In this document: in pieces, positions 12,985 through 59,817 of the stretch
Layout of the letters: every line of letters starts with the position of its first letter
How positions within the stretch are numbered: position 1 is the stretch's first letter
Assembly: GCF_006345805.1 (NCBI RefSeq)
Contig: NW_021833284.1
Coordinates: forward strand, 14,515-78,514
From: Octopus sinensis
Taxonomy: Eukaryota
Length of the DNA stretch: 64,000 nt
Direction: 5' to 3'
The notes under the pieces: generated by a model
What the model was told of the DNA's origin: nothing
The model's input: the letters and a program-made list of their open reading frames with translations, nothing else
Database searches by the model: none
Translations under genes and position numbers: made by a program

Positions 12985-15005
12985 GGAATCAGTGGAACGG
13001 CTGGCATGGGGGAATGGAGTGTGGTGGCATAGCCTTATGGAGTGCGGTGGCATGGGCGAATGGAATGCTGTGACATGGGCGAATGGAGTGCGGTGGCATG
13101 GGGGAATGGAGTGTGGTGGCATGGGGAAATGGAGTGTGGTGGCATGGGCGAATGGAGTGCGGTGGTATGGCCGAATGGAGCGCGGTGGTATGGCGAATGG
13201 AGTGCGGTGGCATGGGTGAATGGAGTGTAGTGGCATGGCTGAATGGAGCACGGTGGTATGGGCGAATGGAGTGCGGTGGCATGGGTGAATGGAGTGTGGT
13301 GGCATGGCTGAATGGAGCACGGTGGTATGGGCGAATGGAGTGCGGTGGTATGGGCGAATGGAGTGCGGTGGCATGGGTGAATGGAGTGTGGTGGCATGGC
13401 TGAATAGAGCATGGTGGTATGGGCGAATGGTGTGCGGTGGCATGGGTGAATGGAGTGTGGTGGCATGGCCGAATGGAGCACGGTGGTATGGGCGAATGGA
13501 GCGCGGTGGTATGGGCGACTGGAGTGTGGTGGCGTGGGTGAATGGAGTGTGGTGGTATGAGCGAATGGAGTGCGGTGACATGGGCGAATGGAGTGTGGTG
13601 GCATGGGCGAATGGAGTGCGGTGGTATGGGCGAATGGAGTGTGGTGGCAAGAGCGAATGGAGTGCGGTGGCATGGGTGAATGGAGTGCGGTGGTATGGCC
13701 GAATGGAGTGCGGTGGCATGGGCGAATGGAGTGCGGTGGCATGGGCGAATGGAGTGCGGTGGCATGGGCGAATGGAGTGCGGTGGCATGGGCGAATGGAG
13801 TGCGGTGGCATGGGCGAATGGAGCGCGGTGGCATGGGCGAATGGAGTGCGGTGACATGGGCGAATGGAGTGCGGTGGTATGGCGAATGGAGTGCGGTGAC
13901 ATGGCGAATGGAGTGTGGTGGCATGGGGAAATGGAGTGTGGTGGCATGGGCGAATGGAGTGCGGTGGTATGGGCGAATGGAGTGCGGTGGCATGGGTGAA
14001 TGGAGTGTGGTGGCATGGCTGAATAGAGCATGGTGGTATGGGCGAATGGTGTGCGGTGGCATGGGTGAATGGAGTTTTGTGGCATGGCCGAATGGAGCAC
14101 GGTGGTATGGGCGAATGGAGCGCGGTGGTATGGGCGACTGGAGTGTGGTGGCGTGGGTGAATGGAGTGTGGTGGTATGAGCGAATGGAGTGCGGTGACAT
14201 GGGCGAATGGAGTGTGGTGGCATGGGCGAATGGAGTGCGGTGGTATGGGCGAATGGAGTGTGGTGGCAAGAGCGAATGGAGTGCGGTGGCATGGGTGAAT
14301 GGAGTGCGGTGGTATGGGCGAATGGAGTGCGGTGGCATGGGCGAATGGAGTGTGGTGGCATGGGCGAATGGAGTGCGGTGGCATGGGCGAATGAAGTGCG
14401 GTGGCATGGGCGAATGGAGTGCGGTGGCATGGGCGAATGGAGCGCGGTGGCATGGGCGAATGGAGTGCGGTGACATGGGCGAATGGAGTGCGGTGGTATG
14501 GGCGAATGGAGTGCGGCGGCATGGGCGAATGGAGTGCGGTGGCATGGGCGAATGGAGCGCGGTGGCATGGGCGAATGGAGTGCGGTGACATGGGCGAATG
14601 GAGTGCGGTGACATGGGCGAATGGAGTGCGGTGACATGGGTGAATGGAGTGTGGTGGTATGGCCGAATGGAGCGCGGTGGTATGGGCGAATGGAGTGCGG
14701 GACATGGGCGAATGGAGTGCGGTGGTATGGGCGAATGGAGTGCGGTGGCATGGGCGAATGGAGTGCGGTGGCATGGGCGAATGGAGCGCGGTGGCATTGG
14801 TGAATGGAGTGCGGTGACATGGGCGAATGGAGTGCGGTGACATGGGTGAATGGAGTGTGGTGGTATGGCCGAATGGAGCGCGGTGGTATGGGCGAATGGA
14901 GTGCGGTGACATGGGCGAATGGAGTGCGGTGGTATGGGCGAATGGAGTGCGGTGGTATAGGCAAATGGAGTGTGGTGGCATGGGCAAATGGAGTGCAGTG
15001 GTATG
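12985..15005. repeat. 23-bp G-rich minisatellite (GGCATGGGCGAATGGAGTGCGGT), roughly 85-90 units
   Basis: Period 23 (atggg at 13741, 13764, 13787). It generates the overlapping 670-750 aa spurious ORFs. Confidence 0.93.
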
Positions 15006-16259
15006 GGCATGTGTTGTGGAAGCATGTTCTGAAGAGGGTGCTGGGGCTTGAGGTAAATGGATAGCAAAAGCAAAGTAGACCGAGGAAAATGTGGAGGGGG
15101 CAGGTGGGGGAGGGGATTGGGAGGGTTGGCTTGAGAAGGGAGGATACCCAAAACCAGGCAAGATGGTGTAAGGGTGGTTGTTATAGCATTGAAGTAGATC
15201 CAGATTTAAAATGATGGTGATGATGTAAACATGATTATTTAAGTGGAAATGCTGCTGATGGAGTAAGAGAGAGTAATTATTATGAGACAAGAGACTGATG
15301 AGGATGAGAGAGAGAGAGAGGGAGTAAATGTTCTTCTCAAGGGGAGAGAACTGCTTCAGGGTTTATATTTTCCCCCCTTATATTGAGAGATTTTATTTTC
15401 TTTGAGTAAAAAGAGGGAAGAGCATATAATATTTCTATATAATTCATTTGTTACATATTCCAGAAGTTCACCCTTGTTCTGGGCTCTTCTGCACAGCATA
15501 ACTCAACATCTTGCTTTTGACAAACGAATCAGACTGCTAAAAGGTTACTAATGGTTACCTGACACTTGTCTTGCTCTTCCAAACTCCTTCTCTGTTTTTT
15601 TTTCTCTCTCTTCACTCATCATCATCGTTTAGCGTCCGCTTTCCATGCTAGCATGGGTTGGACGGTTCAACTGGGGTCTGGGAAGCCAGAAGGCTGCGCC
15701 AGGCTCCAGTCTGATCTGGCAATGTTTCTATGGCTGGATGCCCTTCCTAACGCCAACCACTCCGTGAGTGTAGTGGGTGCTTTTTACGTGCCACTGGCAC
15801 GGAGGCCAGGCCAGGCTGGCAATGGCCACGATTGGATGGTGCTTTTTACATGCCACCGGCATGGAGGCCAGGTGTGGCTGGCAATGGCCACGATTGGATG
15901 GTGCTTTTTACGTGCCACCGGCACGGAGGCCAGGTGAGGCTGGCAACGGCCACGATCAGATGGTGCTTTTTACGTGCCACCGGCACAGAGGCCAGGCCAG
16001 GCTAGCAAACGGCCACAATAGGATGGTGCTTTTTACGTGCCACTGGCACGGAGGCCAGGCCAGGCTGGCAACGGCCATGATCGGATGGTGCTTTTTATGT
16101 GCCACCGGCACGGAAGCCAGTCGCGGCGGTGCTGGCAACGGCCACATTCAGATGGTTCTCTTATGTACCACCGGGACTGGTATCTCAGCTACAATTTCCA
16201 TTGATGTTTTTTGATTTTGATTTTGATATAGATTTTGATTTCATTATTTTCTCCATCAG

Positions 16260-19783: not shown

Positions 19784-22619
19784 TCTTTATATATAAAACT
19801 GAAGTTGTGTGTGTGTCTGTCTACTCCGATTTAGATTCCTAACTATTCCCACATTTTGCGGTGCAGTTTAACCAAAACCGGGTATCTTATAGTCATGATT
19901 CATATCGAGCTCTTCTGGGTATTAGCGCGCTTCACAATGAGTCTACGATTTAAAAAAAAATTTACCATCGGAAACACTGATGGGGTTGGAGGCGTGGGTA
20001 TACTTCTCGCTAAAAAACTGGTAGATAAGGTACTTGAGGTAATCAGAGTAAGTGACAGAATACTTAAGATTAGAATAGTGCTTCATCATAGATTAGCAAC
20101 CATTATATCGGCCTATGCCCCTCAGCCAGGGCTACCCGATGGACAGAAAGACAGTTTCTATGACACCCTACTGCAAACCACCTCATTGACGAATGACAGG
20201 GACCTTCTCTTTGTGGCTGGTGACTTCAATGGGCATGTTGGACGACATGCTGGGGGCTTCCATGGCGTACATGGAGGCTACGGTTATGGTTCCTGCAACA
20301 AGGAGGGAACCAGGCTGCTGGAGTTCTGCGATGCGAATAGTCTTATGGTTTGCAACACTAACTTCAGGAAACCAACAAGCCACCTGATCACCTACCGATC
20401 GGGCCGGCATACTAGCCAAATCGACTACATCCTTGCCAGAAAAAGGGAAAGATGGCTGCTTATAAATGCCAAAACCTTCCCAAGCAAAGAATGCACCCCA
20501 CAACATAGACTGGTAGTTAGTGACTTTAGGATCAGGACGACTAGAAGACGACCAACATGGAGAAGAAGGGTCTGGAAGCTTAAAGACCCTGCGAATGGAC
20601 AGAGATTTAGAGACATGTTACTTGAAGCCTTTGACGAAATAGAAGGGGGTATAGCTACACATGGGGTAGAAGACAACTGGACGTTTCTGAGGGACAACCT
20701 GCTGAAAGCCACTCACCAGATCTGTGGCTGGTGCAAAGTCCCCTCAAGACCCAAAATAACGTGGTGGTGGAACAATATTGTTGACAGGGCTATTAGACAA
20801 AAGAAACAGGCTTGGAAGAACTCCATTCCCCCATACCACCACACTCCATTCGCCTCATGCCACCACACTCCATTCCCCCATGCCAGCCGTTCCACTGATT
20901 CCTCCAACCCCAGCATCCACCTATTTATCATAGTCCTCCAGGCAATAACGGAGGAATTCAAGACAGGATGCCCCTGGGAGCTCCTCTATGCTGATGACCT
21001 TGCTCTAATTGCTGAGTCACTATCAGAACTGGAGAAGTTTCAGGTGTGGAAGCAAGGATTAGAATCGAAGGGCCTTAGAATCAACCTAGCCAAAACCAAA
21101 GTCCTAATAAGTAGGAAGGTAGACCAATCACAAACGACTTCAGGTAGATGGACCTGCTCAATCTGTAAAAAAGGTGTAGGTAGAAACTCTATAAGGTGCA
21201 CCAATTGTAAGCTATGGACACATAAGAGGTGCAGCAATGTCAAAGGAAGGCTAACTAGGAAAATAGTTTTTGTCTCTGGCAGATGCTCAGGAGCAATAAA
21301 CACTGGAAATGTGCAGAGACCAACTAATACCACGTTCCAGGGAGACAAACTAGAAGTAGTTGACAGCTTCTGCTACCTAGGTGACCAAGTCAGTAGCGGG
21401 GTGTGGGTGTGCTGAAAGTGTAACTGCTAGAGTAAGAATAGCCTGAGCAAAGTTTAGAGAGCTCTTACCCCTGTTGGTGACAAAAGGCCTCTCGCTCATA
21501 GTAAAAGGCAGACTGTGTGATGCATGTGTACGTACAGCCATGCTACATGGTAGTGAAACATGGGCCGTGACTGCTGTGGATATGCGTAAGCTCGCAAGAA
21601 ATGAAGCCAGTATGCTCCGATGGATGTGTAATGTCAGTGTGCATACTCGACAGAGTCTAAGTACCTTGAGAGAAAAGCTGAACCTAAGAAGCGTCAGTTG
21701 TGGCGTGCAAGAGAGACGGCTGCGCTGGTATGGTCATGTGACGAGAATGGCTGAAGATAGTTGTGTGCAAAAGTGCCACACCCTAGCAGTTGAGGGAACC
21801 TGTGGAAGAGGTAGACCCAGGAAAACCTGGGACGAGGTGGTGAAGCACAACCTTCGAACTTTAGGTCTCACCAAGGAAATGACCAGAGACCGAGACCTTT
21901 GGAAGTGTGCTGTGCGTGAGAAGACCCGGCAAGACTAGTGAGACCATAACCCGTGGCCTCTACCTGGTATGTAGCCGGTCGACTTATACATACCTTTCCT
22001 TCTTGGGACGTAAAATTCCACTTGTGAAGACCCTTTGAGGCAAGTGAAAATCAAAATCAAAATCAAAATTGCGGCTGTGACAAGTAAGCAAACCATCCGA
22101 TCGTGGCCGTTGCCAGCGTCGCCCCGACTGGCCTCCGTGCCGGTGACACGTAAAAAGCACCATCCGTTCGTGGCCATTGCCAGCCTCGCCTGGCCCCCGT
22201 GCTAGTGGCACGTAAAAAGCTCCATCCGTTCGTGGCCGTTGTCACCGCCGCCTCGCCTGGCCTCCGTGCCAGTGGCACATAAAAGCACCATCCGTTCGTG
22301 TCCGTTGCCAGCCTCGCCTGGCCCCTGTGCAGGTGGCACGTAAAAAGCACCCACTATACTCGCGGAGTGGTTGGCGTTAGGAAGGGCATCCAGCCGTAGA
22401 AACACTGCCAGATCAGACTGGGCCTGATGCAGCCTTCTGGCTTCACAACCCCGGTCGAACCGTCCAACCCATGCTAGCATGGAAAGCGGATGCTAAATGA
22501 TGATGATGATGATGATTTTCCGCATTTTGAATGCATTTTTGCTCGATTTATATAAGGGAAGTAACTCTCTAAAAATGCTTATACAGTTATTTCCCTTACA
22601 AACCCGAGCAACGCCGGGC
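19784..22619 (+). mobile_element. Helitron family 1 copy split by the RTE insertion (19784-19968 and 22515-22619)
   Basis: The two halves are collinear with the 8421-8713 copy. The final CTAG is missing. Confidence 0.75.
19969..22514 (+). mobile_element. 5'-truncated RTE-clade LINE (APE endonuclease, partial RT, Cys-rich finger, 3' UTR with VNTR, (GAT)n tail); RT core deleted
   Basis: Endonuclease motifs SAYAPQ, GDFNGHVG, QIDYIL, SDF. RT motif LLYADDL. CSICKKGVGRNSIRCTNCKLWTHKRC. C-terminus RRLRWYGHV...RGRPRKTW. 3' end ggttggcgttaggaagggcatcc...gatgatgat. Frameshift and stop near 21415. Confidence 0.93.
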
Positions 22620-35632: not shown

Positions 35633-36732
35633 ACTAATAATATTACCTGAACAGGATAAGCATGTGTGTGTGTGTTTGTCACTCATCTGCTTCATAACTG
35701 GTGTTAGTTTGTTTACATCCCCATAATCTTAAGGTTTGGCTAACGAGACTGGAATTGATTTCTTTGGCTAAACCCTTCGACATATTGCTCCAGCCTGGTC
35801 ACCATTCAATGACAGAAGTGAATAGAAAGATAAAAAAATAAAAAGACATTCTCTTATTTTTTAGCTTGCCTCAGTCATTGGGCTGCGGCCATGCTGGGGC
35901 ACCATTGACCTCAGTACCTATTTGTCAATTCTGCTACTTATTCTATCAGTCTCTTTTGCTGAACTGCTAAGTTGTAGGCACATAAACAAACAAACACTGA
36001 TTGTCAAGCAGTGGAGGTCAGAGCAAATAGACACAAACACAAAGGAACACATATACATACAATGGGCTTCTCCACAGTTTCCAATTGCCTGTTTCACTCA
36101 CTGGACATTGGTCATTCTGGAGCTGTATTGGAAGACACATACCCACAGTGCCATGCAGTGGGACTGAACCTATAACCAACTGGATGCAAAGCAGACTTCT
36201 TAACCACACAGCTATACTTTTTCTCTTTTACTTGTTTCAGTCATTTGACTGCGGCCATGCTGGAGCATCGCCTTTAATCGAGCAAATCAACCCCGGGACC
36301 TATTCTTTTGTAAGCCCAGTACTTATTCTATCGGTCTCTTTTGCTGAACTGCTAAGTAACAGGGACATAAACACACCAGCATCGGTTGTCAAGCAATGCT
36401 AGGGGGACAAACACAGACACACAAACATATACACATACACATATATATACACATATATACGACAAGCTTCTTTCAGTTTCCGTCTACCAAATCCACTCAC
36501 AAGGCTTTGGTCGGCCCAAGGCTATAGTAGAAGGTGCCACGCAGTGAGACTGAACCCGGAACCATGTGGTTGGTAAACAAGCTACTTACCACACAGCTAC
36601 CCCTGCATCTCTTCAGAATTTTTTATTTGCCATTAACTCATGAAGTTAATGTAATCGGCTGACCCATCCCCTTGAAATTGCTGGCCTTTTGTCAAAATTT
36701 GAAGCTAATTCCCTTTCTCTATTTTCTTGCAG

Positions 36733-37256
36733 CTGTCAATATCAATGTCAAAACAGTCGTTGCCGTCACTACCCTCGTGACCGTCATCTTTTCTGTCAAC
36801 ACGAGTTCATGTGTGTAGACTACTCCGTGTATCCGAATGGCCAGTGTGACAAGTTCATACGTTGCGTTGGCCACAGACCGATCATCATGAATTGTCCGAT
36901 AAACACGTTGTACAACGTCGTCCTAAGGGTCTGCGATTGGCCCTACGCCGTCGTTTGTACGTCGCCAGCCTTCAGGACCATCAGAACCAGCAGGGTTGTC
37001 ACCGATCACATTACAGTTCCGACATCCACGACAACGACGGAAACGTCCACAGCAACGGTAGACGACGGCTTCAGAGGGGTCAGTGACAATGGCATTACTG
37101 ACAGCGGTGGTGGAGGTGGCATTCACACTAGGACGACATATTGGCTGGTATCATCTTTGCTCTCTTCCTCGGCGATACCACCTGTGCATGTGACGACAGC
37201 ATCACCTGTGACAACGATGGAAACATTTCTAACGTCAAAGCTGTCAACTGAAAAAG
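36733..37256 (+). CDS. Chitin-binding protein exon: peritrophin-A (CBM14) domain plus Thr/Ser-rich linker
   Basis: Acceptor ctattttcttgcag|, donor aaaaag|gtaaat. CVDYSVYPNGQC-DKFIR-C-VGHRPIIMN-C-PINTLYNVVLRV-C-DWPYAVV-C has CBM14 spacing (x10, x5, x9, x12, x7). Followed by VPTSTTTTETSTAT. The frame of the first ~80 nt is ambiguous (see findings). Confidence 0.85.
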
Positions 37257-37845
37257 GTAAATCCTCAAGATTTTTTCAGATTCTAATTTGTAAAACTGAC
37301 CATTGTCCAGAAAGATAATTTATTCAATGTTTTATTTATACAGTGAAGACTTAAGCAATGTGTTCAAAGATGATTAACCCTTTGGAATTTAAACCGGCCA
37401 TCATCATCATCATCATCATCATTGTTTAATGTCCGCTTTCCATGCTAGCATGGGTTGGACGGTTCAACTGGGGTCTGGGAAGCCAGAAGGCTGCACCAGG
37501 CCAGTCATATCTGGTGGTGTTTCTACAGCTGGATGCCCTTCCTAATGCCAACCACTCCATGAGTGTAGTGGGTGCTTTTTACATGCCACCGACACAGGTG
37601 CCAGACGAGGCTGGCGAACGGCCACGCTCGGATGGTGCTTTTTACGTGCCACTGGCACGGATGCCAGGTGAGGCTGGCACGGCCACGATCGGATGGTGTT
37701 TGTTACGTGCCACCAGCACGGAGGCCAGTTGATGCGGTGCCGGCTATGGCCACGTTCGGATGGTTCTCTTATGTGCCACCGGCACTGGTACCACAACTAC
37801 AAATTCCATTGATGTTGATCGATTTCGATTTTGATTTAGTTAGTT

Positions 37846-41929: not shown

Positions 41930-43322
41930 AAATGCCCTGATGCAGTACCAGGCAGTGGCTCCCATGGCTTCTGATCTTAACTGATTGGAAGTGTTATCAT
42001 GTACATTGTTTTGTCTTGGTATAAAAGATGGACTACAGCAAATATTCTGCTCAATACCACAGATTTGCTAATGCCCTGTTGCAGTACCAGGCAGTGGCTC
42101 TCATGGCTTCTGGTCTTAACTGATTAGAAGTGTTATCATGTACATTGTTTTGTCTTGGTATAAAAGATGGACTACAGCAAATATTCTGCTCAATACCACA
42201 GATTTGCTAATGCCCTGATGCAGTTACCAGGCAGTGGCTCTCATGGCTTCTGATCTTAACTGATTGGAAGTGCTATCATGTACATTGTTTTGTCTTGGTA
42301 TAAAAGATGGACTACAGCAAATATTCTGCTCAATACCACAGATTTGCTAATGCCCTGATGCAGTTCCAGGCAGTGGCTCTCATGGCTTCTGATCTTAACT
42401 GATTGGAAGTGCTATCATGTACATTGTTTTGTCTTGGTATAAAAGATGGACTACAGCAAATATTCTGCTCAATACCACAGATTTGCTAATGCCCTGATGC
42501 AGTTCCAGGCAGTGGCTCTCATGGCTTCTGATCTTAACTGATTGGAAGTGCTATCATGTACATTGTTTTGTCTTGGTATAAAAGATGGGCTACAGCAAAT
42601 ATTCTGCTCAATACCACAGATTTGCTAATGCCCTGATGCAGTACCAGACAGTGGCTCTCATGGCTTCTGATCTTAACTGATTGGAAGTGTTATCATGTAC
42701 ATTGTTTTGTCTTGGTATAAAAGATGGGCTACAGTAAATATTCTGCTCAATACCACAGATTTGCTAATGCCCTGATGCAGTACCAGACAGTGGCTCTCAT
42801 GGCTTCTGATCTTAACTGATTGGAAGTGTTTTCATGTACATTGTTTTGTCTTGGTATAAAAGATGGGCTACAGCAAATATTCTGCTCAATACCACAGATT
42901 TGCTTGTCAATTGTTTGACCTTAATCAGTTGAGCATGTCCCTTAGTGGCTGACGATATGTGCATCTCTGATCACGAGCAGAAATAGTTGGGGAGCATCAT
43001 AGCCATGTGTTGAGAGGGATTTTTTGGGGTTTGAATAATTCACCTCTGGAAATATGGGTATTTCATTCAACATCCTTAAACAACCCTTAATTAGGGACCT
43101 TTTGAGCAGGATGGGTTACTTGACCAGAAGAAAATTCTAACTGGGCCCCACCTGCAAGGTCATGTGCTGTTTATCTTGATATGAAATCACCATGTCGCGC
43201 ACATATGGTTGTGGTGCATGTGCCTAGTGTACCCTTATCAGATGAGTAGTCATGATGGGTATACTGGGCTTCGTATATTTTATCCCAGTGTCACTTTGAT
43301 GGCATGCGATGCTCTCTCACTC
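41930..43322 (+). mobile_element. (AAT)n-associated non-coding interspersed element with a 139-bp head repeated 7x
   Basis: Seven 139-bp units (41930-42903), then a ~420-bp body ending ctctctcactc-(AAT)n. The same structure occurs at 47232 and 56107. Confidence 0.85.
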
Positions 43323-44339: not shown

Positions 44340-44617
44340 CTGAAAAACAAGCAGAAGACAAAGTTTACATCCATCGAATGTTTAAATATCTGACAGGAAC
44401 TGGTTGTTAATACAGCACTTGTAATTTTGGGGGAAAATTCATTTTATCTTCAGGGAGAAGCATTTTTGAGTATCATACAGACAGGACAGTAATATTTTGA
44501 ATACAGTATAGCCATGAAAACAGTCGAAAGATTGGACATTTTACCCTTGAGAGGACCCATGAGCCAATTGCACTCGTGCTAGTGGCCTGTAGAGAACACC
44601 TTTTGAGCATTGGGCCT

Positions 44618-45462
44618 CACGGAGGCAAAGTGGCTGAGTTCCTTTCGGGTGCTGGGCCCCATAAAGGTAAAGTGGCTGAGTTCCTTTCGGGTGTTGGGCC
44701 CCATAGAAGTAAAGTGGCTGAGTTCCTTTCGGGTGTTGGGCCCCATAGATTAAAGTGGCTGAGTGCCTTTCGGGTGTTGGGCCCCATAGAGGTAAAGTGG
44801 CTGAGTTCCTTTCAGGTTTTGGGCCCCATGGAGGTAAAGTGGCTGAGTTCCTTTCGGGTGTTGGGCCCCATAAAGGTAAAGTGGCTGAGTTCCTTTCGGG
44901 TGTTGGGCCCCATAGAGGTAAAATGGCTGAGTTCCTTTCGGGTGTAGGGCCCCATAGAGGCAAAGTGGCTGAGTGCCTTTCGGGTGTTGGGCCCCATAGA
45001 GGCAAAGTGGCTGAGTTCCTTTTGAGTGTTGGGCCCCATAGAGGCAAAGTGGCTGAGTTCCTTTTGAGTGTTGGGCCCCATAGAGGTAAAGTGGCTGAGT
45101 GCCTTTCGGGTGTAGGGCCCCATAGAGGTAAAGTGGCTGAGTGCCTTTCGGGTGTAGGGCCCCATAGAGGTAAAGTGGCTGAGTGCCTTTCGGGTGTTGG
45201 GCCCCATAGAGGTAAAGTGGCTGAGTGCCTTTCGGGTGTTGGGCCCCATAGAGGCAAAGTGGCTGAGTTCCTTTTGAGTGTTGGGCCCCATAGAGGTAAA
45301 GTGGCTGAGTGCCTTTCGGGTGTAGGGCCCCATAGAGGTAAAGTGGCTGAGTGCCTTTCGGGTGTTGGGCCCCATAGAGGTAAAGTGGCTGAGTGCCTTT
45401 CGGGTGTTGGGCCCCATAGAGGCAAAGTGGCTGAGTTCCTTTCGGGTGTTTGGCCCCATGGA
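44618..45462. repeat. 42-bp minisatellite, about 20 units
   Basis: Unit ggtaaagtggctgagtgcctttcgggtgttgggccccataga. The period is a multiple of 3, so open frames arise on both strands. Confidence 0.92.
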
Positions 45463-47231: not shown

Positions 47232-50200
47232 TAATTATAATAATGCAGTACCAGGCAGTGGCTCTCATGGCCTCTGATCTTAACTGATTGGAAGTGTAAT
47301 CATGTACATTGTTTTGTCTTGGTATAAAAGATGGGCTACAGCAAATATTCTGCTCAATACCACAGATTTGCTAATGCCCTGATGCAGTACCAGGCAGTGG
47401 CTCTCATGGCTTCTGATCTTAACTGATTGGAAGTGTTATCATGTACATTGTTTTGTCTTGGTATAAAAGATGGGCTACAGCAAATATTCTGCTCAATACC
47501 ACAGATTTGCTAATGCCTTGATGCAGTACCAGGCAGTGGCTCTCATGACTTCTGATCTTAACTGATTGGAAGTGTTATCATGTACATTGTTTTGTCTTGG
47601 TATAAAAGATGGGCTACAGCAAATATTCTGCTCAATACCACAGATTTGCTAATGCCCTGATGCAGTACCAGGCAGTGGCTCTCATGGCTTCTGATCTTAA
47701 CTGATTGGAAGTGTTATCATGTACATTGTTTTGTCTTGGTATAAAAGATGGGCTACAGCAAATATTCTGCTCAATACCACAGATTTGCTAATGCCTTGAT
47801 GCAGTACCAGGCAGTGGCTCTCATGACTTCTGATCTTAACTGATTGGAAGTGTTATCATGTACATTGTTTTGTCTTGGTATAAAAGATGGGCTACAGCAA
47901 ATATTCTGCTCAATACCACAGATTTGCTAATGCCCTGATGCAGTACCAGGCAATGGCTCTCATGGCTTCTGATCTTAACTGATTGGAAGTGTTATCATGT
48001 ACATTGTTTTGTCTTGGTATAAAAGATGGGCTACAGCAAATATTCTGCTCAATACCACAGATTTGCTAATGCCTTGATGCAGTACCAGGCAGTGGCTCTC
48101 ATGACTTCTGATCTTAACTGATTGGAAGTGTTATCATGTACATTGTTTTGTCTTGGTATAAAAGATGGGCTACAGCAAATATTCTGCTCAATACCACAGA
48201 TTTGCTAATGCCCTGATGCAGTACCAGGCAGTGGCTCTCATGACTTCTGATCTTAACTGATTGGAAGTGTTATCATGTACATTGTTTTGTCTTGGTATAA
48301 AAGATGGGCTACAACAAATATTCTGCTCAATACCACAGATTTGCTAATGCCTTGATGCAGTACCAGGCAGTGGCTCTCATGACTTCTGATCTTAACTGAT
48401 TGGAAGTGTTATCATGTACATTGTTTTGTCTTGGTATAAAAGATGGGCTACAGCAAATATTCTGCTCAATACCACAGATTTGCTAATGCCCTGATGCAGT
48501 ACCAGGCAGTGGCTCTCATGGCTTCTGATCTTAACTGATTGGAAGTGTTATCATGTACATTGTTTTGTCTTGGTATAAAAGATGGGCTACAGCAAATATT
48601 CTGCTCAATACCACAGATTTGCTAATGCCTTGATGCAGTACCAGGCAGTGGCTCTCATGACTTCTGATCTTAACTGATTGGAAGTGTTATCATGTACATT
48701 GTTTTGTCTTGGTATAAAAGATGGGCTACAGCAAATATTCTGCTCAATACCACAGATTTGCTAATGCCCTGATGCAGTACCAGGCAGTGGCTCTCATGGC
48801 TTCTGATCTTAACTGATTGGAAGTGTTATCATGTACATTGTTTTGTCTTGGTATAAAAGATGGGCTACAGCAAATATTCTGCTCAATACCACAGATTTGC
48901 TAATGCCCTGATGCAGTACCAGGCAGTGGCTCTCATGGCTTCTGATCTTAACTGATTGGAAGTGTTATCATGTACATTGTTTTGTCTTGGTATAAAAGAT
49001 GGGCTACAGCAAATATTCTGCTCAATACCACAGATTTGCTAATGCCCTGATGCAGTACCAGGCAGTGGCTCTCATGGCTTCTGATCTTAACTGATTGGAA
49101 GTGTTATCATGTACATTGTTTTGTCTTGGTATAAAAGATGGGCTACAGCAAATATTCTGCTCAATACCACAGATTTGCTAATGCCCTGATGCAGTACCAG
49201 GCAGTGGCTCTCATGGCTTCTGATCTTAACTGATTGGAAGTGTTATCATGTACATTGTTTTGTCTTGGTATAAAAGATGGGCTACAGCAAATATTCTGCT
49301 CAATACCACAGATTTGCTAATGCCCTGATGCAATACCAGGCAGTGGCTCTCATGGCTTCTGATCTTAACTGATTGGAAGTGTTATCATGTACATTGTTTT
49401 GTCTTGGTATAAAAGATGGGCTACAGCAAATATTCTGCTCAATACCACAGATTTGCTAATGCCCTGATGCAGTAACAGGCAGTGGCTCTCATGACTTCTG
49501 ATCTTAACTGATTGGAAGTGTTATCATGTACATTGTTTTGTCTTGGTATAAAAGATGGGCTACAGCAAATATTCTGCTCAATACCACAGATTTGCTAATG
49601 CCCTGATGCAGTACCAGCCAGTGGCTCTCATGGCTTCTGATCTTAACTGATTGGAAGTGTTATCATGTACATTGTTTTGTCTTGGTATAAAAGATGGGCT
49701 ACAGCAAATATTCTGCTCAATACCACAGATTTGCTAATGCCCTGATGCAATACCAGGCAGTGGCTCTCATGGCTTCTGATCTTAACAGATTGGAAGTGTT
49801 ATCATGTACATTGTTTTGTCTTGGTATAAAAGATGGGCTACAGCAAATATTCTGCTCAATACCACAGATTTGCTAATGCCCTGATGCAGTACCAGGCAGT
49901 GGCTCTCATGACTTCTGATCTTAACTGATTGGAAGTGTTATCATGTACATTGTTTTGTCTTGGTATAAAAGAGGGGCTACAGAAAATATTCTGCTCAATA
50001 CCACAGATTTGCTAATGCCCTGATGCAGTACCAGACAGTGGCTGTCATGGCTTCTGATCTTAACTGATTTGAAGTGTTATCATGTACATTGTTTTGTCTT
50101 GGTATAAAAGATGGCCTACAGCAAATATTGTGCTCAATACCACAGATTTGCTAATGCCCTGATGCAGTACCAGACAGTGGCTGTCATGGCTTTTGATCTT

Positions 50201-50700
50201 AACTGATTGGAAGTGTTATCATGTACATTGTTTTGTCTTGGTATAAAAGAGGGGCTACAGAAAATATTCTGCTCAATACCACAGATTTGCTTGTCAGTTG
50301 TTTGACCTTAACCAGTTGAGCATGTCCCTTAGTGGCTGACAATATGTGCATCTCTGATCATGAGCAGAAGTAGTGGGAGAGTATCATAACCATGTGTTGA
50401 GAGGGATTCTTTGGGGTTTGGATAATTCACCTCAGGAAACATGGGTGTTTCCTTCAACATCCTTAAGCAATCCTTATTCAGGGACCTTTTGAGCGGGATG
50501 GGCTACTCGAACAGAAGAAAATTTTAACTGGGTCCCACCTGCAAGGTCATGCGCTGTTTATCTTGATATAAGATCACCCTGTAGCGCACATATGGTTGTG
50601 ATGCATGTGTCTGGTGTACCCTTATCAGATGGGTAGTCATACTGGGCTTCATATATTTTACCCCAGTGTCACTTTGATGGCATGAACAGCTCTCTCAGTG
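47232..50700 (+). mobile_element. Same element, head repeated ~22x
   Basis: Period 139 bp (47371 to 47510). The array ends at 50290 and runs into the same body sequence. Confidence 0.88.
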
Positions 50701-51686: not shown

Positions 51687-51896
51687 CAAACCTTCGTCTG
51701 CCGTTGCTGTCACATTCTGGGAGTCTGTCTGGGTAGTTACAAACTCTGATGGAATGGTCGAAAAAGGTTCCTCTGGCACATTCAAACTTGAATGGACGTC
51801 CGGCGATGCAACGGAAAAACAGCTTGCAGTTGTATTGGTGAGGGTAGAATCCGTTCTTTTCAGGACAGAAAAACTCTTGGTTACCTTCAGTGACAC
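51687..51896 (-). CDS. Exon 3: CBM14 domain 2
   Basis: tttctgaaacacag| ... tttg|gtaagg, 210 nt, phase 1-1. VTEGNQEFFCPEKNGFYPHQYNCKLFFRCIAGRPFKFECARGTFFDHSIRVCNYPDRLPECDSNGRRRF. This frame is not in the ORF track. Confidence 0.93.
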
Positions 51897-55067: not shown

Positions 55068-55469
55068 CTGAATTATGAGGGTCCTGTCCTTTTTCGGGTT
55101 CCGGTATAAAGCTCTCGAAATGGCGTGACTCAGGGAAAGCTCCGTCTTCTCCATGGAAACTCCAACCACCGTTATTCTTATTGTTGTTGTTGTTGTTGTC
55201 GTTGTAGTGCGCTTCTGGTAAACTTAGTTTGTTCGAGGGGTCGGGACGTATTCGCCTGCCCTTTTCATCACAGTTCTGCACCTCGTGAGGCCAGTTGCAC
55301 ACGTTGAGGCCAGAATCGAAATATATTCCTGGTGGACAGGTGAACTGGTACGGAATGCTTCCTACACATCGATAAAATATCCGGCAGTCGTAGGCATCTG
55401 CATAGAAGCCATCTTTTAGCCCATGGCAACTGGGAACACTCATTCCCCACACTGGCCATACAATTGATT
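55068..55469 (-). CDS. Exon 2: CBM14 domain 1 plus Asn-rich linker
   Basis: tatatttacag| ... tcag|gtcatt, 402 nt, phase 1-1. CHGLKDGFYADAYDCRIFYRCVGSIPYQFTCPPGIYFDSGLNVCNWPHEVQNC (x13, x5, x9, x12, x8). The linker contains an AAC-repeat-derived NDNNNNNNKNN. Confidence 0.92.
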
Positions 55470-55475
55470 CTGTAA

Positions 55476-55518
<43 letters not shown>

Positions 55519-56106
55519 CTTACTTTTTACTCTTTTACTTGTTTCAGTCATTTTGACTGTGGCCATGCTGGAGCACCGCCTTTTGTCGAGCAAATCAACC
55601 CTGGGACTTATTCTTTGTAAGCCTAGTACTTATTCTATTGGTCTCTTTTGCCAAACCGCTAAGTTACGGGGGACGTAAACACACCAGAATCGGTTGTCAA
55701 GCAATGCTAGGGGGACAAACACAGACACACAAACACACACACATACACATATATATACATATATACGACAGGCTTCTTTCAGTTTCCGTCTACCAAATCC
55801 ACTCACAAGGCATTGGTCGGCCCGAGGCTATAGCAGAAGACACTTGCCCAAGGTGCCACGCAGTGGGACTGAACCTGGAACCATGTGGTTGGTTAGCAAG
55901 CTACTTACCACACAGTCACTCCTGCGCCTATAATAATAAAAAAAAATTATAATAATAATCATCTATTCTACTATAGGCACAAGGCCTGAAATTTGGGAGG
56001 GGATAAGTCGATTACATTGATACCAGTACTCAACTGGTACTTAATTTATCGAGCCCCGAAAGGATGAAAGGCAAAGTTAACCTCGGCAGAATTTGAACTG
56101 AGAGCA

Positions 56107-57000
56107 TAATGCCTTGATGCAGTACCAGACAGTGGCTCTCATGGCTTCTGATCTTAACTGATTGGAAATGTTATCATGTACATTGTTTTGTCTTGGTATA
56201 AAAGATGGGCTACAGAAAATATTCTGCTCAATACCACAGATTTGCTAATGCCCTGATGCAGTACCAGACAGTGGCTCTCATGGCTTCTGATCTTAACTGA
56301 TTGGAAATGTTATCATGTACATTGTTTTGTCTTGGTATAAAAGATGGGCTACAGAAAATATTCTGCTCAATACCACAGATTTGCTAATGCCCTGATGCAG
56401 TACCAGGCAGTGGCTCTCGTGGCTTCTGATCTTAACTGATTGGAAGTGTTATCATGTACATTGTTTTGTCTTGGTATAAAAGATGGCCTACAGCAAATAT
56501 TCTGCTCAATACCACAGATTTGCTAATGCCCTGATGCAGTACCAGGCAGTGGCTCTCATGGCTTCTGATCTTAACTGATTGGAAGTGTTATCATGTACAT
56601 TGTTTTGTCTTGGTATAAAAGATGGGCTACAGCAAATATTCTGCTCAATACCACAGATTTGCTAATGCCCTGATGCAGTACCAGGCAGTGGCTCTCATGG
56701 ATTCTGATCTGAACTGATTGGGAGTGTTATCATGTACATTGTTTTGTCTTGGTATAAAAGATGGCCTACAGCAAATATTCTGCTCAATACCACAGATTTG
56801 CTTGTCAGTTGTTTGACCTTAACCAGTTAAGCATGTCCCTTAGTGGCTGACAATATGTGCATCTCTGATCATGAGTAGAAGTAGTGGGGGAGCATCATAC
56901 CCATGTGTTGTGAGGGATTCTTTGGGGTTTGAATAATTCACCTCTGGAAATATGGATTACAGCAAACATTCTGCTCAATGCCACAGATTTGCTTGTCAGT
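56107..57000 (+). mobile_element. Same element, head repeated 5x, body truncated
   Basis: Five units (56107-56802), then body to about 56950. Confidence 0.85.
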
Positions 57001-57636
57001 ACCTACTGACTAGCTCCCATAAAAAGCACCTATATATGTATATATATATGTGTATGTATATATATATATGTGTATGTATGTATGTATGTATGTATGTATG
57101 TATGTATGTATGTATGTACGAATATATATTTATGTGTGTGTCTTTGTGTCTGTGTCTGTTTCCTTCACCATCGCTTGACAACCGATGTTGGTGTGTTTAT
57201 GTCCCTGAAACTTAGCGGTTCAGCAAAAAGAATAAGTACTCGGCTTACGAAGAATAAGTCCCGGGGTCAATTTGTTCTGCCTGAAGGCGGTGCTCCAGCA
57301 TGGCCACAGTCAAATGACTGAAACATGTCAAATGAGTAAAGGAGTAAAGACGTAGAACATTCAACTCTGCGTGCAATGCTCCAGCATGGCCTTAACCACG
57401 AAGGGTTAAAAGTACAGAACTGAAAGGAGTGGCTGTGTGGTAAGTACAACCACATGGTTCCGGGTTCATTCCCACTGTGTGGAACCTTCGGCAAGTGTCT
57501 TCTACTATAGCCTCCGGCCAACCAAAGCCTTGTGAGTGGATTTGGTAGACAGAAACTGAAAAGAAGCCCATCGTATATATGTATATATATATAAAATTTG
57601 ATATTTCTGATTACGGTAACCAGTGAATAGATTTCA

Positions 57637-57676
<40 letters not shown>

Positions 57677-58617
57677 CCCGTGGCCTTCTACTTGGGATGG
57701 AGCCAGCCTACGTATGCATACCTTCCCTTCTTGGGACACAAAACTCTACTTGTGAAGACCTGTTGAGGCAAGTGAGGATCAGAATCGAAATCGATCAATG
57801 GAAATTGCAGATGTGTTACCAGTGCCGGTGGCATGTAAGAGAACCTTCCGTTTCGCGACCGTTGCCAGCACCGCCCCGTTTCGTGTCCGTTGCCAGCCTC
57901 GCCTGGCCCTTGTGCCGATGGCACATAAAAAGCACCATCTGTTCGTGGCCGTTTGCCAGCTCTGTCTGGCACCTGTGCGGGTGGCACGTAAAAAGCACCC
58001 ACTACACTCACGGAGTGGTTGGCGTTAGGAAGGGCATCCAGCCGTAGAAACACTGCCAGATTTGACTGGGCCTGATGAAGCCTTCTGGCTTCACAGACCC
58101 CAGTAGAACCGTCCAACCCATGCTAGCATGGAAAACGGACGTTAAACGATGATGATGATGATGATGATGATATTATATATTGATCATTCATTTTTATACT
58201 TTTTGAGATCTAGTTATATGATTGATTGATTCTAGTTTCAGCTCATGAGCTGTGGCCATGCTGGGGCACCGCCATATATGTTTTATAAATATATATATTA
58301 TTTGTTATTTATGTTTTGCTTTATGTCTATCAATGTTTGAGTTGCATAATAGTGGTTTTATCTCTAATTTATATTTTATATGTGTGTGTGTGTGTTTGTC
58401 CTCCCCAACATCGCTTCACAACCGATGTTGGTGTGTTTACATCCCCTGTAACTTAGCGGTTCGGCAAAAAAAAAAAACGATAGAGTAAATACTAGGCTTA
58501 CAAAGAATAAGTCCCGGGGTCGATTTGCTCGACTAAAGGTGGTGCTCCAGCATGGCCACAGTCAAATGACTGAAACAAGTAAACGAGTAAAGAGTATCAA
58601 TTAAAAAATTGACAATC

Positions 58618-58698
58618 CTCTCTTACAGCTGTTTCAATTACAGACGTTCAGAAGATTAATTAATAAAATTAAAAATTATCGAATCTCATCAGAGATAG
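58618..58698 (-). ncRNA. Type I hammerhead ribozyme-like motif (Penelope-type, palindromic stem III)
   Basis: The minus strand reads CTATCT-CTGATGA-GATT-(42 nt)-AATT-GAAAC-AGCT-GTA-AGAGAG. The CUGAUGA and GAAA core is intact, the cleavage triplet is GUA, stem I is 5/6 paired, and position 10.1-11.1 is G.U instead of G-C. Confidence 0.6.
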
Positions 58699-58840
58699 TT
58701 GAAAATATACAAAATAGGTGTTCAGTTCCTGCATGATGAGTATAAAGCAACAAAGGTATACCGGAAAAATTAAACATCTTATTGAATCTGACAATAATTT
58801 TATAACAAATCCTACCATGCCTATTAAGGAGGCCAAACAT

Positions 58841-59731
58841 TGGATCTTTTCGGTTTGACCGGCAGTTTTTTAAAAATAATTTCTAGGTAACTAAACACTT
58901 TTAAACTTCGTATTCTGGTAGAATGTGTTTATAAAACATCTTTTTCTCTCGGCTTTATTGAGAAAATTCTATAGTTTGTAAGATATTTGTTGTTGTTTTT
59001 CTTCAATTTCTGCAATTTCAACCAATCAATGACGTCTATTGAGGTAAACAACATTCTGTGCCGTATGAATATGTCCCTCGTTTAAGAAACAGATTGGGTT
59101 TATTTACATTTCTGAAGAAAAAAAGGGATCTTTTCGGTTTGACCGGCAGTTTTTAAAATAATTTCCACGTAACTAAACACTTTTAAACTTCGTATACTGG
59201 TAGAATGTGTTTATAAAACATCTTTTTCTCTTGGCTTAATTGAGAAAATTCTATAGTTTGTAAGATATTTGTTGTTTTTTTCTTCAATTTCTGCAATTTC
59301 AACCAATCACTGATGTCTACTGAGGTGAAAACATTCTGTGCCGTATGAATATGTCCCTCGTTTAAGAAACAGGGATCTTCTCGGTTTGACCGGCAGTTTT
59401 TTAAAATAATTTCTAGATAAATAAATACTTTTAAACTTCGTATACTGGCAGAATGTGTTTATAAAACATCTTTTTCTCTCGGCTTTATTGAGAAAATTCT
59501 ATAGTTTGTAAAATATTTGTTGTTTTTTTTCTTCAATTTCTGCAATTTCAACCAATCAATGACGTCTATTGAGGTAAAAATGTGATCTTTTCGGTTTGAA
59601 CAGCAGATTTTAAAAATAATTTCCACGTAACTAAACACTTTTAAACTTCGTATACTGGTAGAATGTGTTTATAAAACATCTTTTTCTCGTGGCTTTATTG
59701 AGAAAATTCTATAGTTTCTAAGATGTTTGTT
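58841..59731. repeat. Four imperfect 150-285 bp tandem units of an AT-rich repeat
   Basis: Units start (g)gatcttttcggtttg at about 58841, 59126, 59372 and 59584. Confidence 0.85.
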
Positions 59732-59771
59732 GTAAAGAGTAAAGAGAATAGCTAAAGAATATCGTACTTAC

Positions 59772-59817
59772 GTAGAAGGGAGATGAAGACCACGGTGTTA
59801 AAAGCAGCAGACTTCAT
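59772..59817 (-). CDS. First coding exon (signal peptide) of a secreted protein with three CBM14 domains
   Basis: ATG at 59817, MKSAAFNTVVFISLL, donor |gtaagt, phase 1. Joined to the next exon it gives MKSAAFNTVVFISLLQSIVWPVWG|MSVPSC, a plausible signal peptide. A possible acceptor (tttctcag) 7 nt before the ATG suggests an upstream non-coding exon. Confidence 0.8.

What the first reader, a model, noticed from the sequence alone, without database searches (positions are those of the whole stretch)
58618..58698. Hammerhead ribozyme motif in sense orientation in intron 1 of the chitin-binding gene
Seen: the minus strand carries a full type I core, CTATCT-CTGATGA-GATT...AATT-GAAAC-AGCT-GTA-AGAGAG, with palindromic stem III (ACAGCTGT) and a 42-nt AU-rich stem II loop. 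Known: minimal type I hammerheads with palindromic stem III occur in Penelope-like elements and retrozymes and usually cleave as dimers. Inference: the host gene is transcribed from the same strand, so its pre-mRNA would contain a potential self-cleavage site about 1.15 kb after exon 1. A G.U at 10.1-11.1 and one stem I mismatch may have attenuated it.
Basis: partly seen in the sequence, partly recalled or inferred. Interest (0 to 1): 0.72.

Follow-up and report, generated by a model that had tools for sequence, protein, structure and literature searches.

The report
Lone hammerhead look-alike in an intron
The hammerhead ribozyme letters are really there, on the sense strand of intron 1 of a chitin-binding gene, but two of its three stems are too weak to hold the fold, it has no partner copy and no hammerhead model recognises it, so it is most likely a coincidental or dead look-alike and not a working self-cleaving RNA.

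Summary
The motif is present exactly as described, on the minus strand at 58698-58618. It has a complete catalytic core, an 8-nt palindrome at helix III and a GUA cleavage site (58624|58623). My gene model puts it sense-strand in a 4.3-kb intron 1 of a signal-peptide + CBM_14 gene.

It does not behave like a hammerhead.
- No Rfam hammerhead model reports it at E<=10. Phage type I hammerheads used as controls score 25-30 bits.
- The hammerhead fold costs +5.2 kcal/mol against an MFE of -11.5. It is still 11 kcal/mol worse with a dimer-like helix III.
- In 70 control hammerheads the ribozyme fold is the MFE in 97%.
- Helix II (+2.6) and helix I (-0.6) lie outside the control ranges.
- It is single-copy in the window. 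It lies outside the neighbouring tandem array, has no partner on its strand in 64 kb, and no Penelope-like element is nearby.

A match this good is rare per window (about 1e-4) but expected about 1-4 times per 2.5-Gb genome.

Verdict: probably a coincidence (0.6), less likely a rearranged relic (0.2), and unlikely an active intronic ribozyme (under 0.1).

The parts
58693..58698 (-). Putative helix I, 5' strand (CUAUCU)
   Evidence: Pairs with 58623-58618 with one A x G mismatch. Duplex energy is only -0.6 kcal/mol.
58686..58692 (-). Core box 1, CUGAUGA (C3-A9)
   Evidence: It is the only CTGATGA on the minus strand of the 64-kb window.
58636..58685 (-). Putative helix II (GAUU/AAUU: G.U plus three A-U pairs) closing a 42-nt AU-rich loop
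   Evidence: As a hairpin it costs +5.3 kcal/mol, or +2.6 at best with internal pairing. In 70 control hammerheads helix II has a median of -4.0 and a maximum of +0.4.
58632..58635 (-). Core box 2, GAAA (G12-A15.1)
58625..58632 (-). Helix III: palindrome ACAGCUGU. It gives 2 bp plus an AGCU loop as a monomer and 8 bp as a dimer.
   Evidence: The self-duplex is -11.1 kcal/mol. The 8-mer occurs at 2 sites in the window against 1.1 expected.
58618..58624 (-). A17 (58624), putative cleavage site 58624|58623, and helix I 3' strand AGAGAG
58598..58834 (-). Single-copy AT-rich (30% GC) stretch that carries the motif
   Evidence: No other copy in the window, even with a word-7 blastn. Its fold is no better than shuffles, z = -0.16. 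No terminal inverted repeats.
58366..58597 (-). SINE copy starting about 20 nt 3' of the motif; not part of it
   Evidence: 84-89% identical to about 25 other copies, all of which end at the same boundary. The SINE core is found 23 times in the window.
58835..59733 (-). Tandem array of about 3.3 units of 213-281 bp, 5' of the motif; it carries no hammerhead boxes
59772..59817 (-). Inferred exon 1 of the host gene (ATG plus signal-peptide-like MKSAAFNTVVFISLL), followed by donor GTAAGT at 59771-59766
   Evidence: Inferred from sequence only.
55470..59771 (-). Inferred intron 1 (4302 nt, 38% GC), holding the motif, the SINEs and two tandem arrays
   Evidence: Joining exon 1 to exon 2 keeps the reading frame.
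55068..55469 (-). Inferred exon 2 with a chitin-binding Peritrophin-A (CBM_14) domain. The 3' end of the exon is not determined.
   Evidence: Pfam PF01607, E 1.6e-15. Sequence.

Best explanation
This is a solitary hammerhead look-alike and not a working ribozyme.

A stretch of single-copy, AT-rich intron DNA happens to spell both hammerhead core boxes, an 8-nt palindrome in the helix III position, and minimal pairings for helices I and II.

In the pre-mRNA the region would fold differently. One hairpin pairs U4-A9 and the 5' strand of helix II with the AU-rich 'loop 2'. A second hairpin pairs the 3' strand of helix I with CUUCU inside the same loop. The catalytic three-way junction is therefore essentially never populated, and the intron is simply spliced out.

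Shown here: the sequence, the energetics, the lack of any model match, and the lack of repeats or a partner copy. Inferred: that the origin is coincidence and that no cleavage occurs in vivo.
For: 1. Rfam. There is no hammerhead match at gathering score, nor at E<=10 in 701 nt or 116 nt. In that last search, unrelated families at 7-16 bits were listed. Real phage type I hammerheads score 25-30 bits against RF00163, with E 2e-5 to 1e-3.

2. Energetics. The hammerhead-constrained fold is +5.2 kcal/mol against an MFE of -11.5. Its ensemble share is about 1e-12, and lower with flanks. With helix III lengthened to mimic the dimer, it is still 11.0 kcal/mol worse than the MFE.

3. Controls. In 70 control hammerheads the ribozyme fold equals the MFE (difference <=1) in 97%. 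Their helix II has a median of -4.0 and a maximum of +0.4, against +2.6 for the candidate. Their helix I has a median of -4.1 and a weakest value of -1.5, against -0.6 for the candidate.

4. The MFE sequesters both core boxes.

5. There is no second copy to dimerise with. The minus strand has one CUGAUGA in 64 kb, and a relaxed CUGANGA descriptor finds no partner.

6. It belongs to no repeat in the window. The neighbouring tandem array has no hammerhead boxes, and no PLE (GIY-YIG/RT) is present.

7. The 237-nt host stretch is no more structured than shuffles.

8. The candidate sits at or near the minimum of every element. Long loops and all-weak pairs are what chance matches in 30-38% GC sequence look like. 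About 1-4 such matches are expected per 2.5-Gb genome.

9. A perfectly intact core beside a helix II with no G-C pair is not what neutral decay of a real copy predicts. It is what selecting on the core pattern predicts (inference).
Against: - The per-window chance of a match this good is small. It is about 3e-5 to 1e-4, and 0 of 1889 decoy descriptors gave even a palindromic-helix-III hit.
- None of 14 chance two-box matches in viral contigs had helices I and II this good.
- Helix sizes (I 6 bp, II 4 bp, III 2 bp plus a 4-nt palindromic loop) are exactly those given for canonical metazoan type I hammerheads in PMC4209133.
- Solo monomers of retrozymes are common, and in Xenopus 42-44% overlap introns (bioRxiv 10.64898/2026.07.22.740005).
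- Nearest-neighbour energies ignore tertiary contacts and protein chaperones.
- For twister ribozymes, stem imperfections and predicted stem energy barely affected cleavage (PMC11662667).
- The controls were phage hammerheads with long helix III, not metazoan ones.
- The source genome could not be searched, so family membership is untested.
Confidence: 0.6

Rival explanations
1. It is a rearranged, dead relic of a real type I hammerhead from a Penelope-like element or a non-LTR retrozyme. A solo or 5'-truncated copy landed in the intron, and its helix II/loop 2 was later disrupted by an insertion or deletion. Today it is inactive.
For: - The helix sizes and the palindromic helix III match the canonical metazoan type I design (PMC4209133).
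- Chance expectation is low per window.
- Solo retrozyme monomers are frequent and often intronic.
- The motif sits in an intron crowded with retroelement insertions, next to a low-GC tandem array with retrozyme-sized units.
- 23 nt of 'loop 2' are AAUU/AAUUUU-like low complexity that could be an expansion.
Against: - There is no homology to anything else in the window and no PLE ORF.
- The adjacent array lacks hammerhead boxes.
- Removing the low-complexity part of loop 2 reveals no hidden helix II (my reading of the sequence).
- Decay strong enough to erase every G-C pair of helix II should also have hit the ~20 core and palindrome positions, all of which are intact. At the ~11-16% divergence seen among neighbouring SINE copies, helix II should still be recognisable.
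- No Rfam match.
Confidence: 0.22
2. It is a genuine, weak or regulated sense-strand intronic hammerhead. It cleaves the CBM_14 pre-mRNA at 58624|58623, perhaps as an intermolecular dimer or with protein help, and so lowers expression of the host gene.
For: - All invariant core positions, A15.1-U16.1 and a cleavable GUA are intact.
- It is in sense orientation in the inferred intron 1.
- The dimer helix III would be 8 bp, -11.1 kcal/mol.
- PLE min-hammerheads also show very low activity in vitro and may need host factors (PMC4209133).
- Ribozymes can tolerate stem imperfections (PMC11662667).
Against: - Helices I and II are outside the range of 70 real hammerheads, and the catalytic fold is 11-17 kcal/mol above the MFE.
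- There is no second copy in cis, so dimerisation would need two nascent transcripts to meet.
- G.U replaces the usual G10.1-C11.1 pair.
- No hammerhead model matches, including HH9 and HH10 if they are among the 4227 families.
- No conservation data exist.
- A 42-nt unstructured loop 2 is not described for canonical, min-HHR or retrozyme hammerheads in the papers read.
Confidence: 0.08
3. The UGAUGA box belongs to another small RNA, such as an intronic C/D-box snoRNA, and not to a hammerhead.
For: - UGAUGA (58691-58686) and CUGA (58651-58648) lie on the sense strand.
- There are weak C/D-box hits on the minus strand: TtnuCD1, 15.8 bits, E 6.3.
- There is a SNORD27-like hit on the plus strand at 58728-58795: 22.2 bits, E 0.42.
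Against: - All scores are far below gathering (52-70 bits).
- The boxes are only 34 nt apart.
- The flanks form no terminal stem.
- The better hit is antisense to the host gene (my reading of the sequence).
Confidence: 0.02

Closest known systems
Canonical metazoan type I hammerhead (Rfam RF00163; Schistosoma/newt/retrozyme type)
   Same: Same topology, with helix I open. Identical core boxes. Helix I of 6 bp and helix II of 4 bp. A 2-bp helix III capped by a 4-nt palindromic loop, which implies dimer-dependent cleavage (PMC4209133).
   Different: Helix II has no G-C pair and closes a 42-nt loop instead of about 4-8 nt. 10.1-11.1 is G.U. Helix I has a central mismatch. No loop-loop contact nucleotides are recognisable. 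There is no match to RF00163 at E<=10, where real ones score 25-30 bits. It is not in a tandem repeat.
Min-hammerheads of Penelope-like elements (Cervera & De la Pena 2014)
   Same: Short palindromic helix III, dependence on dimers, and frequent occurrence as single motifs away from full elements.
   Different: Those have a long helix II (6-8 bp) with a bulged 5' nucleotide, and they fall into multi-copy consensus families in pLTRs. Here helix II is 4 weak pairs, there is no PLE ORF or pLTR in 64 kb, and no second copy.
Metazoan non-LTR retrozymes (Cervera & De la Pena 2020; Li et al. 2026 preprint)
   Same: Low-GC context. A tandem array with 213-281-bp units lies 137 nt away. Solo monomers of retrozymes are known, many of them in introns.
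   Different: The array units carry no hammerhead boxes and the motif lies outside the array. The surrounding 237 nt are not highly self-paired, z = -0.16.
Conserved intronic hammerheads of amniotes (HH9/HH10; De la Pena & Garcia-Robles 2010, title seen in the reference list; details are from my own knowledge)
   Same: Sense-strand position inside an intron of a protein-coding gene, so that cleavage would cut the pre-mRNA.
   Different: Those are deeply conserved and fold stably. Here conservation could not be tested, and no hammerhead-family model in the Rfam library matched.
'HHR_core' matches in Naiad PLEs (Craig et al. 2021, PMC8557442)
   Same: Sequences that hold the hammerhead core strings but do not fit the stem/loop descriptors. 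This is the same situation of a core without convincing helices.
   Different: Those lie within a defined transposon family. This one is in single-copy sequence, and it does fit a relaxed descriptor.

Membership tests
Hammerhead ribozyme, type I (Rfam RF00163 / clan CL00010) | Invariant core: C3 U4 G5 A6 N7 G8 A9, G12 A13 A14, A15.1-U16.1, H17 | tested here: met
   All positions are present on the minus strand, with A17 at 58624.
Hammerhead ribozyme, type I (Rfam RF00163 / clan CL00010) | Stable helix II closing a short loop, usually with G10.1-C11.1 | tested here: not met
   Helix II is G.U plus three A-U pairs closing a 42-nt loop. It costs +2.6 to +5.3 kcal/mol. The 70 control hammerheads have a median of -4.0 and a maximum of +0.4.
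Hammerhead ribozyme, type I (Rfam RF00163 / clan CL00010) | Helix I able to hold the substrate strand | tested here: inconclusive
   5 of 6 pairs can be drawn. The duplex is only -0.6 kcal/mol (-2.5 when extended), and the weakest control is -1.5.
Hammerhead ribozyme, type I (Rfam RF00163 / clan CL00010) | Three-way-junction fold is the predicted or near-predicted structure | tested here: not met
   The difference from the MFE is +16.7 kcal/mol as a monomer and +11.0 with a dimer-mimic helix III. In controls it is <=1 kcal/mol in 97%.
Hammerhead ribozyme, type I (Rfam RF00163 / clan CL00010) | Significant score against the family covariance model | tested here: not met
   No hammerhead-family hit at gathering or at E<=10. 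The positive controls score 25-30 bits.
Hammerhead ribozyme, type I (Rfam RF00163 / clan CL00010) | Site-specific self-cleavage 3' of position 17 | not testable with these tools
   This needs in vitro transcription or mapping of RNA ends.
Penelope-like-element min-hammerhead | Lies in a pLTR of, or a fragment homologous to, a PLE (RT + GIY-YIG) | tested here: not met
   Among the 47 ORFs of >=130 aa, the 10 scanned with Pfam showed no GIY-YIG or PLE RT; the only RT is a LINE fragment at 19856-21938. The flanks are single copy in the window. Homology to PLEs elsewhere in the genome could not be tested.
Penelope-like-element min-hammerhead | Long helix II (6-8 bp) with a bulged 5' nucleotide; short palindromic helix III | tested here: not met
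   The palindromic helix III is present. Helix II is only 4 weak pairs, and no alternative pairing with a bulge exists (feature list from PMC4209133).
Penelope-like-element min-hammerhead | Member of a multi-copy consensus family with covariation | not testable with these tools
   The source genome is not available. The metagenome collection holds no DNA of this organism: its SINE core, present 23 times in the window, gives 0 hits.
Metazoan non-LTR retrozyme | Tandem repeats of 150-450 bp, each unit with a type I hammerhead | tested here: not met
   The array at 58835-59733 has units of 213-281 bp but no CUGANGA boxes on the motif's strand (one CTGAAGA on the opposite strand, not a descriptor hit). 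The motif lies 137 nt outside it.
Metazoan non-LTR retrozyme | Monomer RNA highly self-paired | tested here: not met
   The 237-nt host stretch folds at -41.2 kcal/mol against a shuffle mean of -40.5, z = -0.16.
Conserved intronic hammerhead (HH9/HH10 type) | Sense orientation within an intron of a protein-coding gene | tested here: met
   Exon 1 (59817-59772), intron (59771-55470) and exon 2 (from 55469) join in frame. CBM_14 has E 1.6e-15. This is a gene model only.
Conserved intronic hammerhead (HH9/HH10 type) | Conservation of the motif across species | not testable with these tools
   No homologue of the host protein was retrieved, and no contig encodes the overlapping ORF.

The most novel reading that the evidence does not exclude
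A solitary type I hammerhead with an unusually long AU-rich loop 2 is a real, attenuated ribozyme kept in the sense strand of intron 1 of an invertebrate chitin-binding gene. It would cleave the nascent pre-mRNA, as a trans-dimer or with protein help, and so tune expression of the host gene.
Probability: 0.07. Interest if true: 0.55.

Novelty: not a real feature. Interest (0 to 1): 0.2.

Why it matters
If it were active, it would be an invertebrate example of a pre-mRNA-cutting intronic hammerhead outside any transposon, with an odd helix II. That would bear on how such ribozymes get co-opted for gene regulation.

As it stands, its value is cautionary. A complete hammerhead core with a palindromic helix III, and even drawable stems, can turn up about once or a few times per large AT-rich genome. 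Pattern hits therefore need three checks: stem energetics against real controls, family membership, and conservation.

One practical point came out of the controls. Clear phage type I hammerheads score 25-30 bits against Rfam RF00163, below its gathering score of 34. A gathering-threshold scan alone would therefore miss real ones.

Tried and rejected
1. Rfam at gathering on the whole window, and at E<=10 on 701 nt and 116 nt: no hammerhead family.

2. Search for a partner or second motif with strict and relaxed (CUGANGA, long loops) descriptors: the three other relaxed hits lie in other repeats and have stems of only 1-2 bp in places. None is near or convincing.

3. Search for in-window homologues of 58598-58834, with blastn word 11 and word 7: none. 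No terminal inverted repeats.

4. Orthologue route.
- A protein search with the spliced exon 1+2 product found nothing.
- An exact look-up of the ORF overlapping the motif found nothing.
- I ran no further search on this.

5. A metagenome scan for the motif found nothing. A control scan with the window's own high-copy SINE core also found nothing, so that negative carries no information.

6. A viral-contig scan for CTGATGA...GAAACAGCTGTA gave 14 matches. None is a hammerhead by Rfam or by stems. I used them only as an empirical null.

7. Hidden helix II: deleting the low-complexity part of loop 2, or allowing a bulged 5' nucleotide, gives no better pairing (my reading of the sequence).

8. C/D-box snoRNA reading of the UGAUGA/CUGA boxes: rejected. 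Scores are far below threshold, there is no terminal stem, and the spacing or strand is wrong.

9. The idea that the adjacent tandem array is a retrozyme: rejected, because its units have no hammerhead boxes.

10. Literature search for hammerheads in cephalopods or octopus: nothing specific. I think the SINE resembles an octopus SINE, but that is recollection only and was not tested.

Full report
WHAT IS THERE. Read on the minus strand, 58698-58618 spells CUAUCU-CUGAUGA-GAUU-(42 nt)-AAUU-GAAA-CAGCUGU-A-AGAGAG.
- All invariant hammerhead positions are present: C3-A9 at 58692-58686, G12-A14 plus A15.1 at 58635-58632, U16.1 at 58625 and A17 at 58624.
- Helix III is the palindrome ACAGCUGU. It gives 2 bp plus an AGCU loop in a monomer and 8 bp in a dimer.
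- Helix II is G.U plus three A-U pairs.
- Helix I is 6 bp with a central A x G mismatch.

CONTEXT. The host gene model holds up.
- An ATG at 59817 opens MKSAAFNTVVFISLL, followed by a GTAAGT donor at 59771.
- A pyrimidine/AT-rich tract and an AG at 55471-55470 lead into an exon that continues the frame into a CBM_14 chitin-binding domain (Pfam E 1.6e-15).
- The motif therefore lies on the sense strand of a 4302-nt intron 1, 1148 nt after exon 1. No transcript data were available, so this remains a model.
- The intron is crowded with repeats. A SINE (58366-58597) starts about 20 nt 3' of the motif; its core occurs 23 times in the window. A tandem array of 213-281-bp units runs from 58835 to 59733.
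- The motif itself sits in 237 nt of 30%-GC sequence. That stretch has no other copy in the window even at low stringency, has no terminal inverted repeats, and has no more secondary structure than shuffled sequence (z = -0.16).
- Of the 47 ORFs of 130 aa or more, the ten I scanned with Pfam include no Penelope-like element. The only reverse transcriptase found is a LINE fragment at 19856-21938.

IS IT MORE THAN CHANCE?
- A loose descriptor is expected 0.003-0.008 times per 64 kb on both strands. That descriptor asks for helix I 5/6, helix II >=3 bp, helix III >=2 bp and any loop 2 up to about 80 nt.
- Adding a fully palindromic helix III and helix II >=4 bp brings the expectation down to about 3e-5 by simulation, and to about 1e-4 by a product of base-frequency terms (my calculation).
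- On the real sequence, 1889 decoy descriptors with permuted core boxes gave 5 loose hits and no hit with a palindromic helix III.
- None of 14 chance two-box matches in viral contigs had helices I and II as good.
- For this one window the match is therefore unexpected.
- Scaled to a 2.5-Gb genome, the same rates give 200-300 loose and about 1-4 strict chance matches. The strict descriptor was also written after seeing the hit, and I do not know how many windows the scan read.

DOES IT LOOK LIKE A HAMMERHEAD TO TOOLS THAT KNOW HAMMERHEADS? No.
- Rfam reports no hammerhead family at gathering score on the whole window.
- It also reports none at E<=10 on 701 nt or on 116 nt. That last search did list unrelated families at 7-16 bits.
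- To check that this negative means something, I fetched real type I hammerheads from viral contigs with a two-gap pattern.
- Most of these have clean 4-12-bp helices. Three in locus L079 score 25.1-30.2 bits against RF00163, with E 2e-5 to 1e-3 in an 801-nt search.
- These scores are below the family's gathering score of 34, which is why a gathering scan of 20 such loci found none.
- By extrapolating the E-values, I estimate that the candidate scores at least about 14 bits lower than these controls.

ENERGETICS.
- With the hammerhead pairs enforced and the core kept unpaired, the 81-nt motif folds at +5.2 kcal/mol. The MFE is -11.5. The ensemble share of the hammerhead fold is about 1e-12, and smaller with flanks.
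- Helix II as a hairpin costs +5.3 kcal/mol, or +2.6 at best. Helix I as a duplex gives -0.6, or -2.5 when extended with a bulge. Only the dimer form of helix III is stable, at -11.1.
- The predicted fold pairs U4-A9 and the 5' strand of helix II with the AU-rich loop. It also pairs AGAGAG with CUUCU inside that loop.
- In 70 bona fide-looking control hammerheads, the ribozyme fold equals the MFE within 1 kcal/mol in 97%. Helix II has a median of -4.0 (maximum +0.4) and helix I a median of -4.1 (weakest -1.5).
- The candidate is 16.7 kcal/mol off its MFE. It is still 11.0 off when helix III is lengthened to mimic the dimer.
- Dimerisation therefore does not rescue it.
- Dimerisation would in any case have to be intermolecular. 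The minus strand has only one CUGAUGA in 64 kb, and a relaxed CUGANGA descriptor finds no partner.

ORIGIN.
- The helix sizes match the canonical metazoan design: I = 6 bp, II = 4 bp, III = 1-2 bp with a 2-4-nt palindromic loop, active as dimers in tandem repeats (PMC4209133).
- Solo retrozyme monomers are common, and in Xenopus 42-44% overlap introns. A relic cannot be dismissed.
- A relic nevertheless predicts the wrong pattern. Neighbouring SINE copies differ by 11-16%. At that level helix II should still be recognisable.
- Decay deep enough to remove every G-C pair from helix II should not have spared all of the roughly 20 core and palindrome positions.
- An intact core with minimal, all-weak helices and an arbitrary long loop is what one gets by selecting random AT-rich sequence on the core pattern.
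- Removing the low-complexity part of the loop reveals no hidden helix.
- The adjacent array is retrozyme-sized, but its units have no CUGANGA boxes on the motif's strand; the one CTGAAGA on the opposite strand is not a descriptor hit.
- Craig et al. describe the same phenomenon of core strings without fitting helices in Naiad elements (PMC8557442).

CAVEATS.
- Nearest-neighbour energies ignore tertiary contacts and proteins.
- PLE min-hammerheads are barely active in vitro yet conserved.
- Twister ribozymes tolerate many stem imperfections (PMC11662667).
- My controls are phage hammerheads with long helix III, not metazoan ones.
- The decisive tests could not be run: a genome-wide family search, orthologous introns and cleavage assays.
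- The protein search for the host gene returned nothing, and the ORF look-up returned nothing.
- The metagenome collection holds no DNA of this organism, because even its high-copy SINE core gives no hit.

VERDICT.
- My probabilities are: coincidental look-alike 0.6; rearranged dead relic of a PLE/retrozyme hammerhead 0.22; real weak intronic ribozyme 0.08; other small RNA 0.02.
- Whatever its origin, I put the probability that it does not cleave as it stands at about 0.9.

Noticed in passing
window 5466-6810: A 103-bp satellite with 13 copies at 98% identity. Each unit contains CTGATGA on the plus strand, which explains why the plus strand has 21 such boxes and the minus strand only one. No unit forms a hammerhead.
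   Followed up: partly
window 41931-42904, 47243-50291, 56107-56802: The same 139-bp satellite occurs in three blocks of 7, 22 and 5 copies at 97-98% identity. The last block lies inside the same inferred intron 1.
   Followed up: no
window 58366-58597 and about 22 other sites: A high-copy SINE with core TGACTG[C/T]GGCCATGCTGGAGCACC has 23 copies in 64 kb on both strands. CG-to-TG variants point to CpG decay. From memory it resembles an octopus SINE; this was not tested.
   Followed up: partly
window 58835-59733: A low-GC tandem array of about 3.3 units with variable length (213, 245 and 281 bp) lies directly 5' of the motif on the minus strand. It is retrozyme-like in size, but its units carry no hammerhead boxes on the motif's strand; one CTGAAGA lies on the opposite strand.
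   Followed up: yes
window 58728-58795 (+): A C/D-box-like stretch (AUGAUGA ... CUGA) resembles SNORD27 at 22.2 bits against a gathering score of 52, E 0.42 in 701 nt. It is antisense to the host gene and has no terminal stem, so it is probably chance.
   Followed up: partly
window 55068-55469 (-), about 51700-51860 (-), 36689-37318 (+): Three separate CBM_14 (Peritrophin-A) reading frames suggest a small cluster of chitin-binding genes on both strands. A protein search with the first one found no homologue in the 5.8-billion-protein collection.
   Followed up: partly
window 19856-21938 (+): A non-LTR retrotransposon fragment carries an endonuclease/exonuclease/phosphatase domain, an RT and a PHD-like zinc finger. 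The reading frame is interrupted.
   Followed up: no
window 13002-15008; 2201-2695; 44610-45459: Long minisatellites: 23 bp x 87, 99 bp x 5 (His/Pro-rich in translation) and 42 bp x 20. They create long spurious ORFs in several frames.
   Followed up: no
L079 2403-3095 (IMG/VR contig IMGVR_UViG_3300006924_000032), and dozens of other loci L015-L101: Clear type I hammerheads in viral contigs often occur several within 1 kb. They score 25-30 bits against Rfam RF00163, below its gathering score of 34, so gathering-threshold scans miss them.
   Followed up: partly
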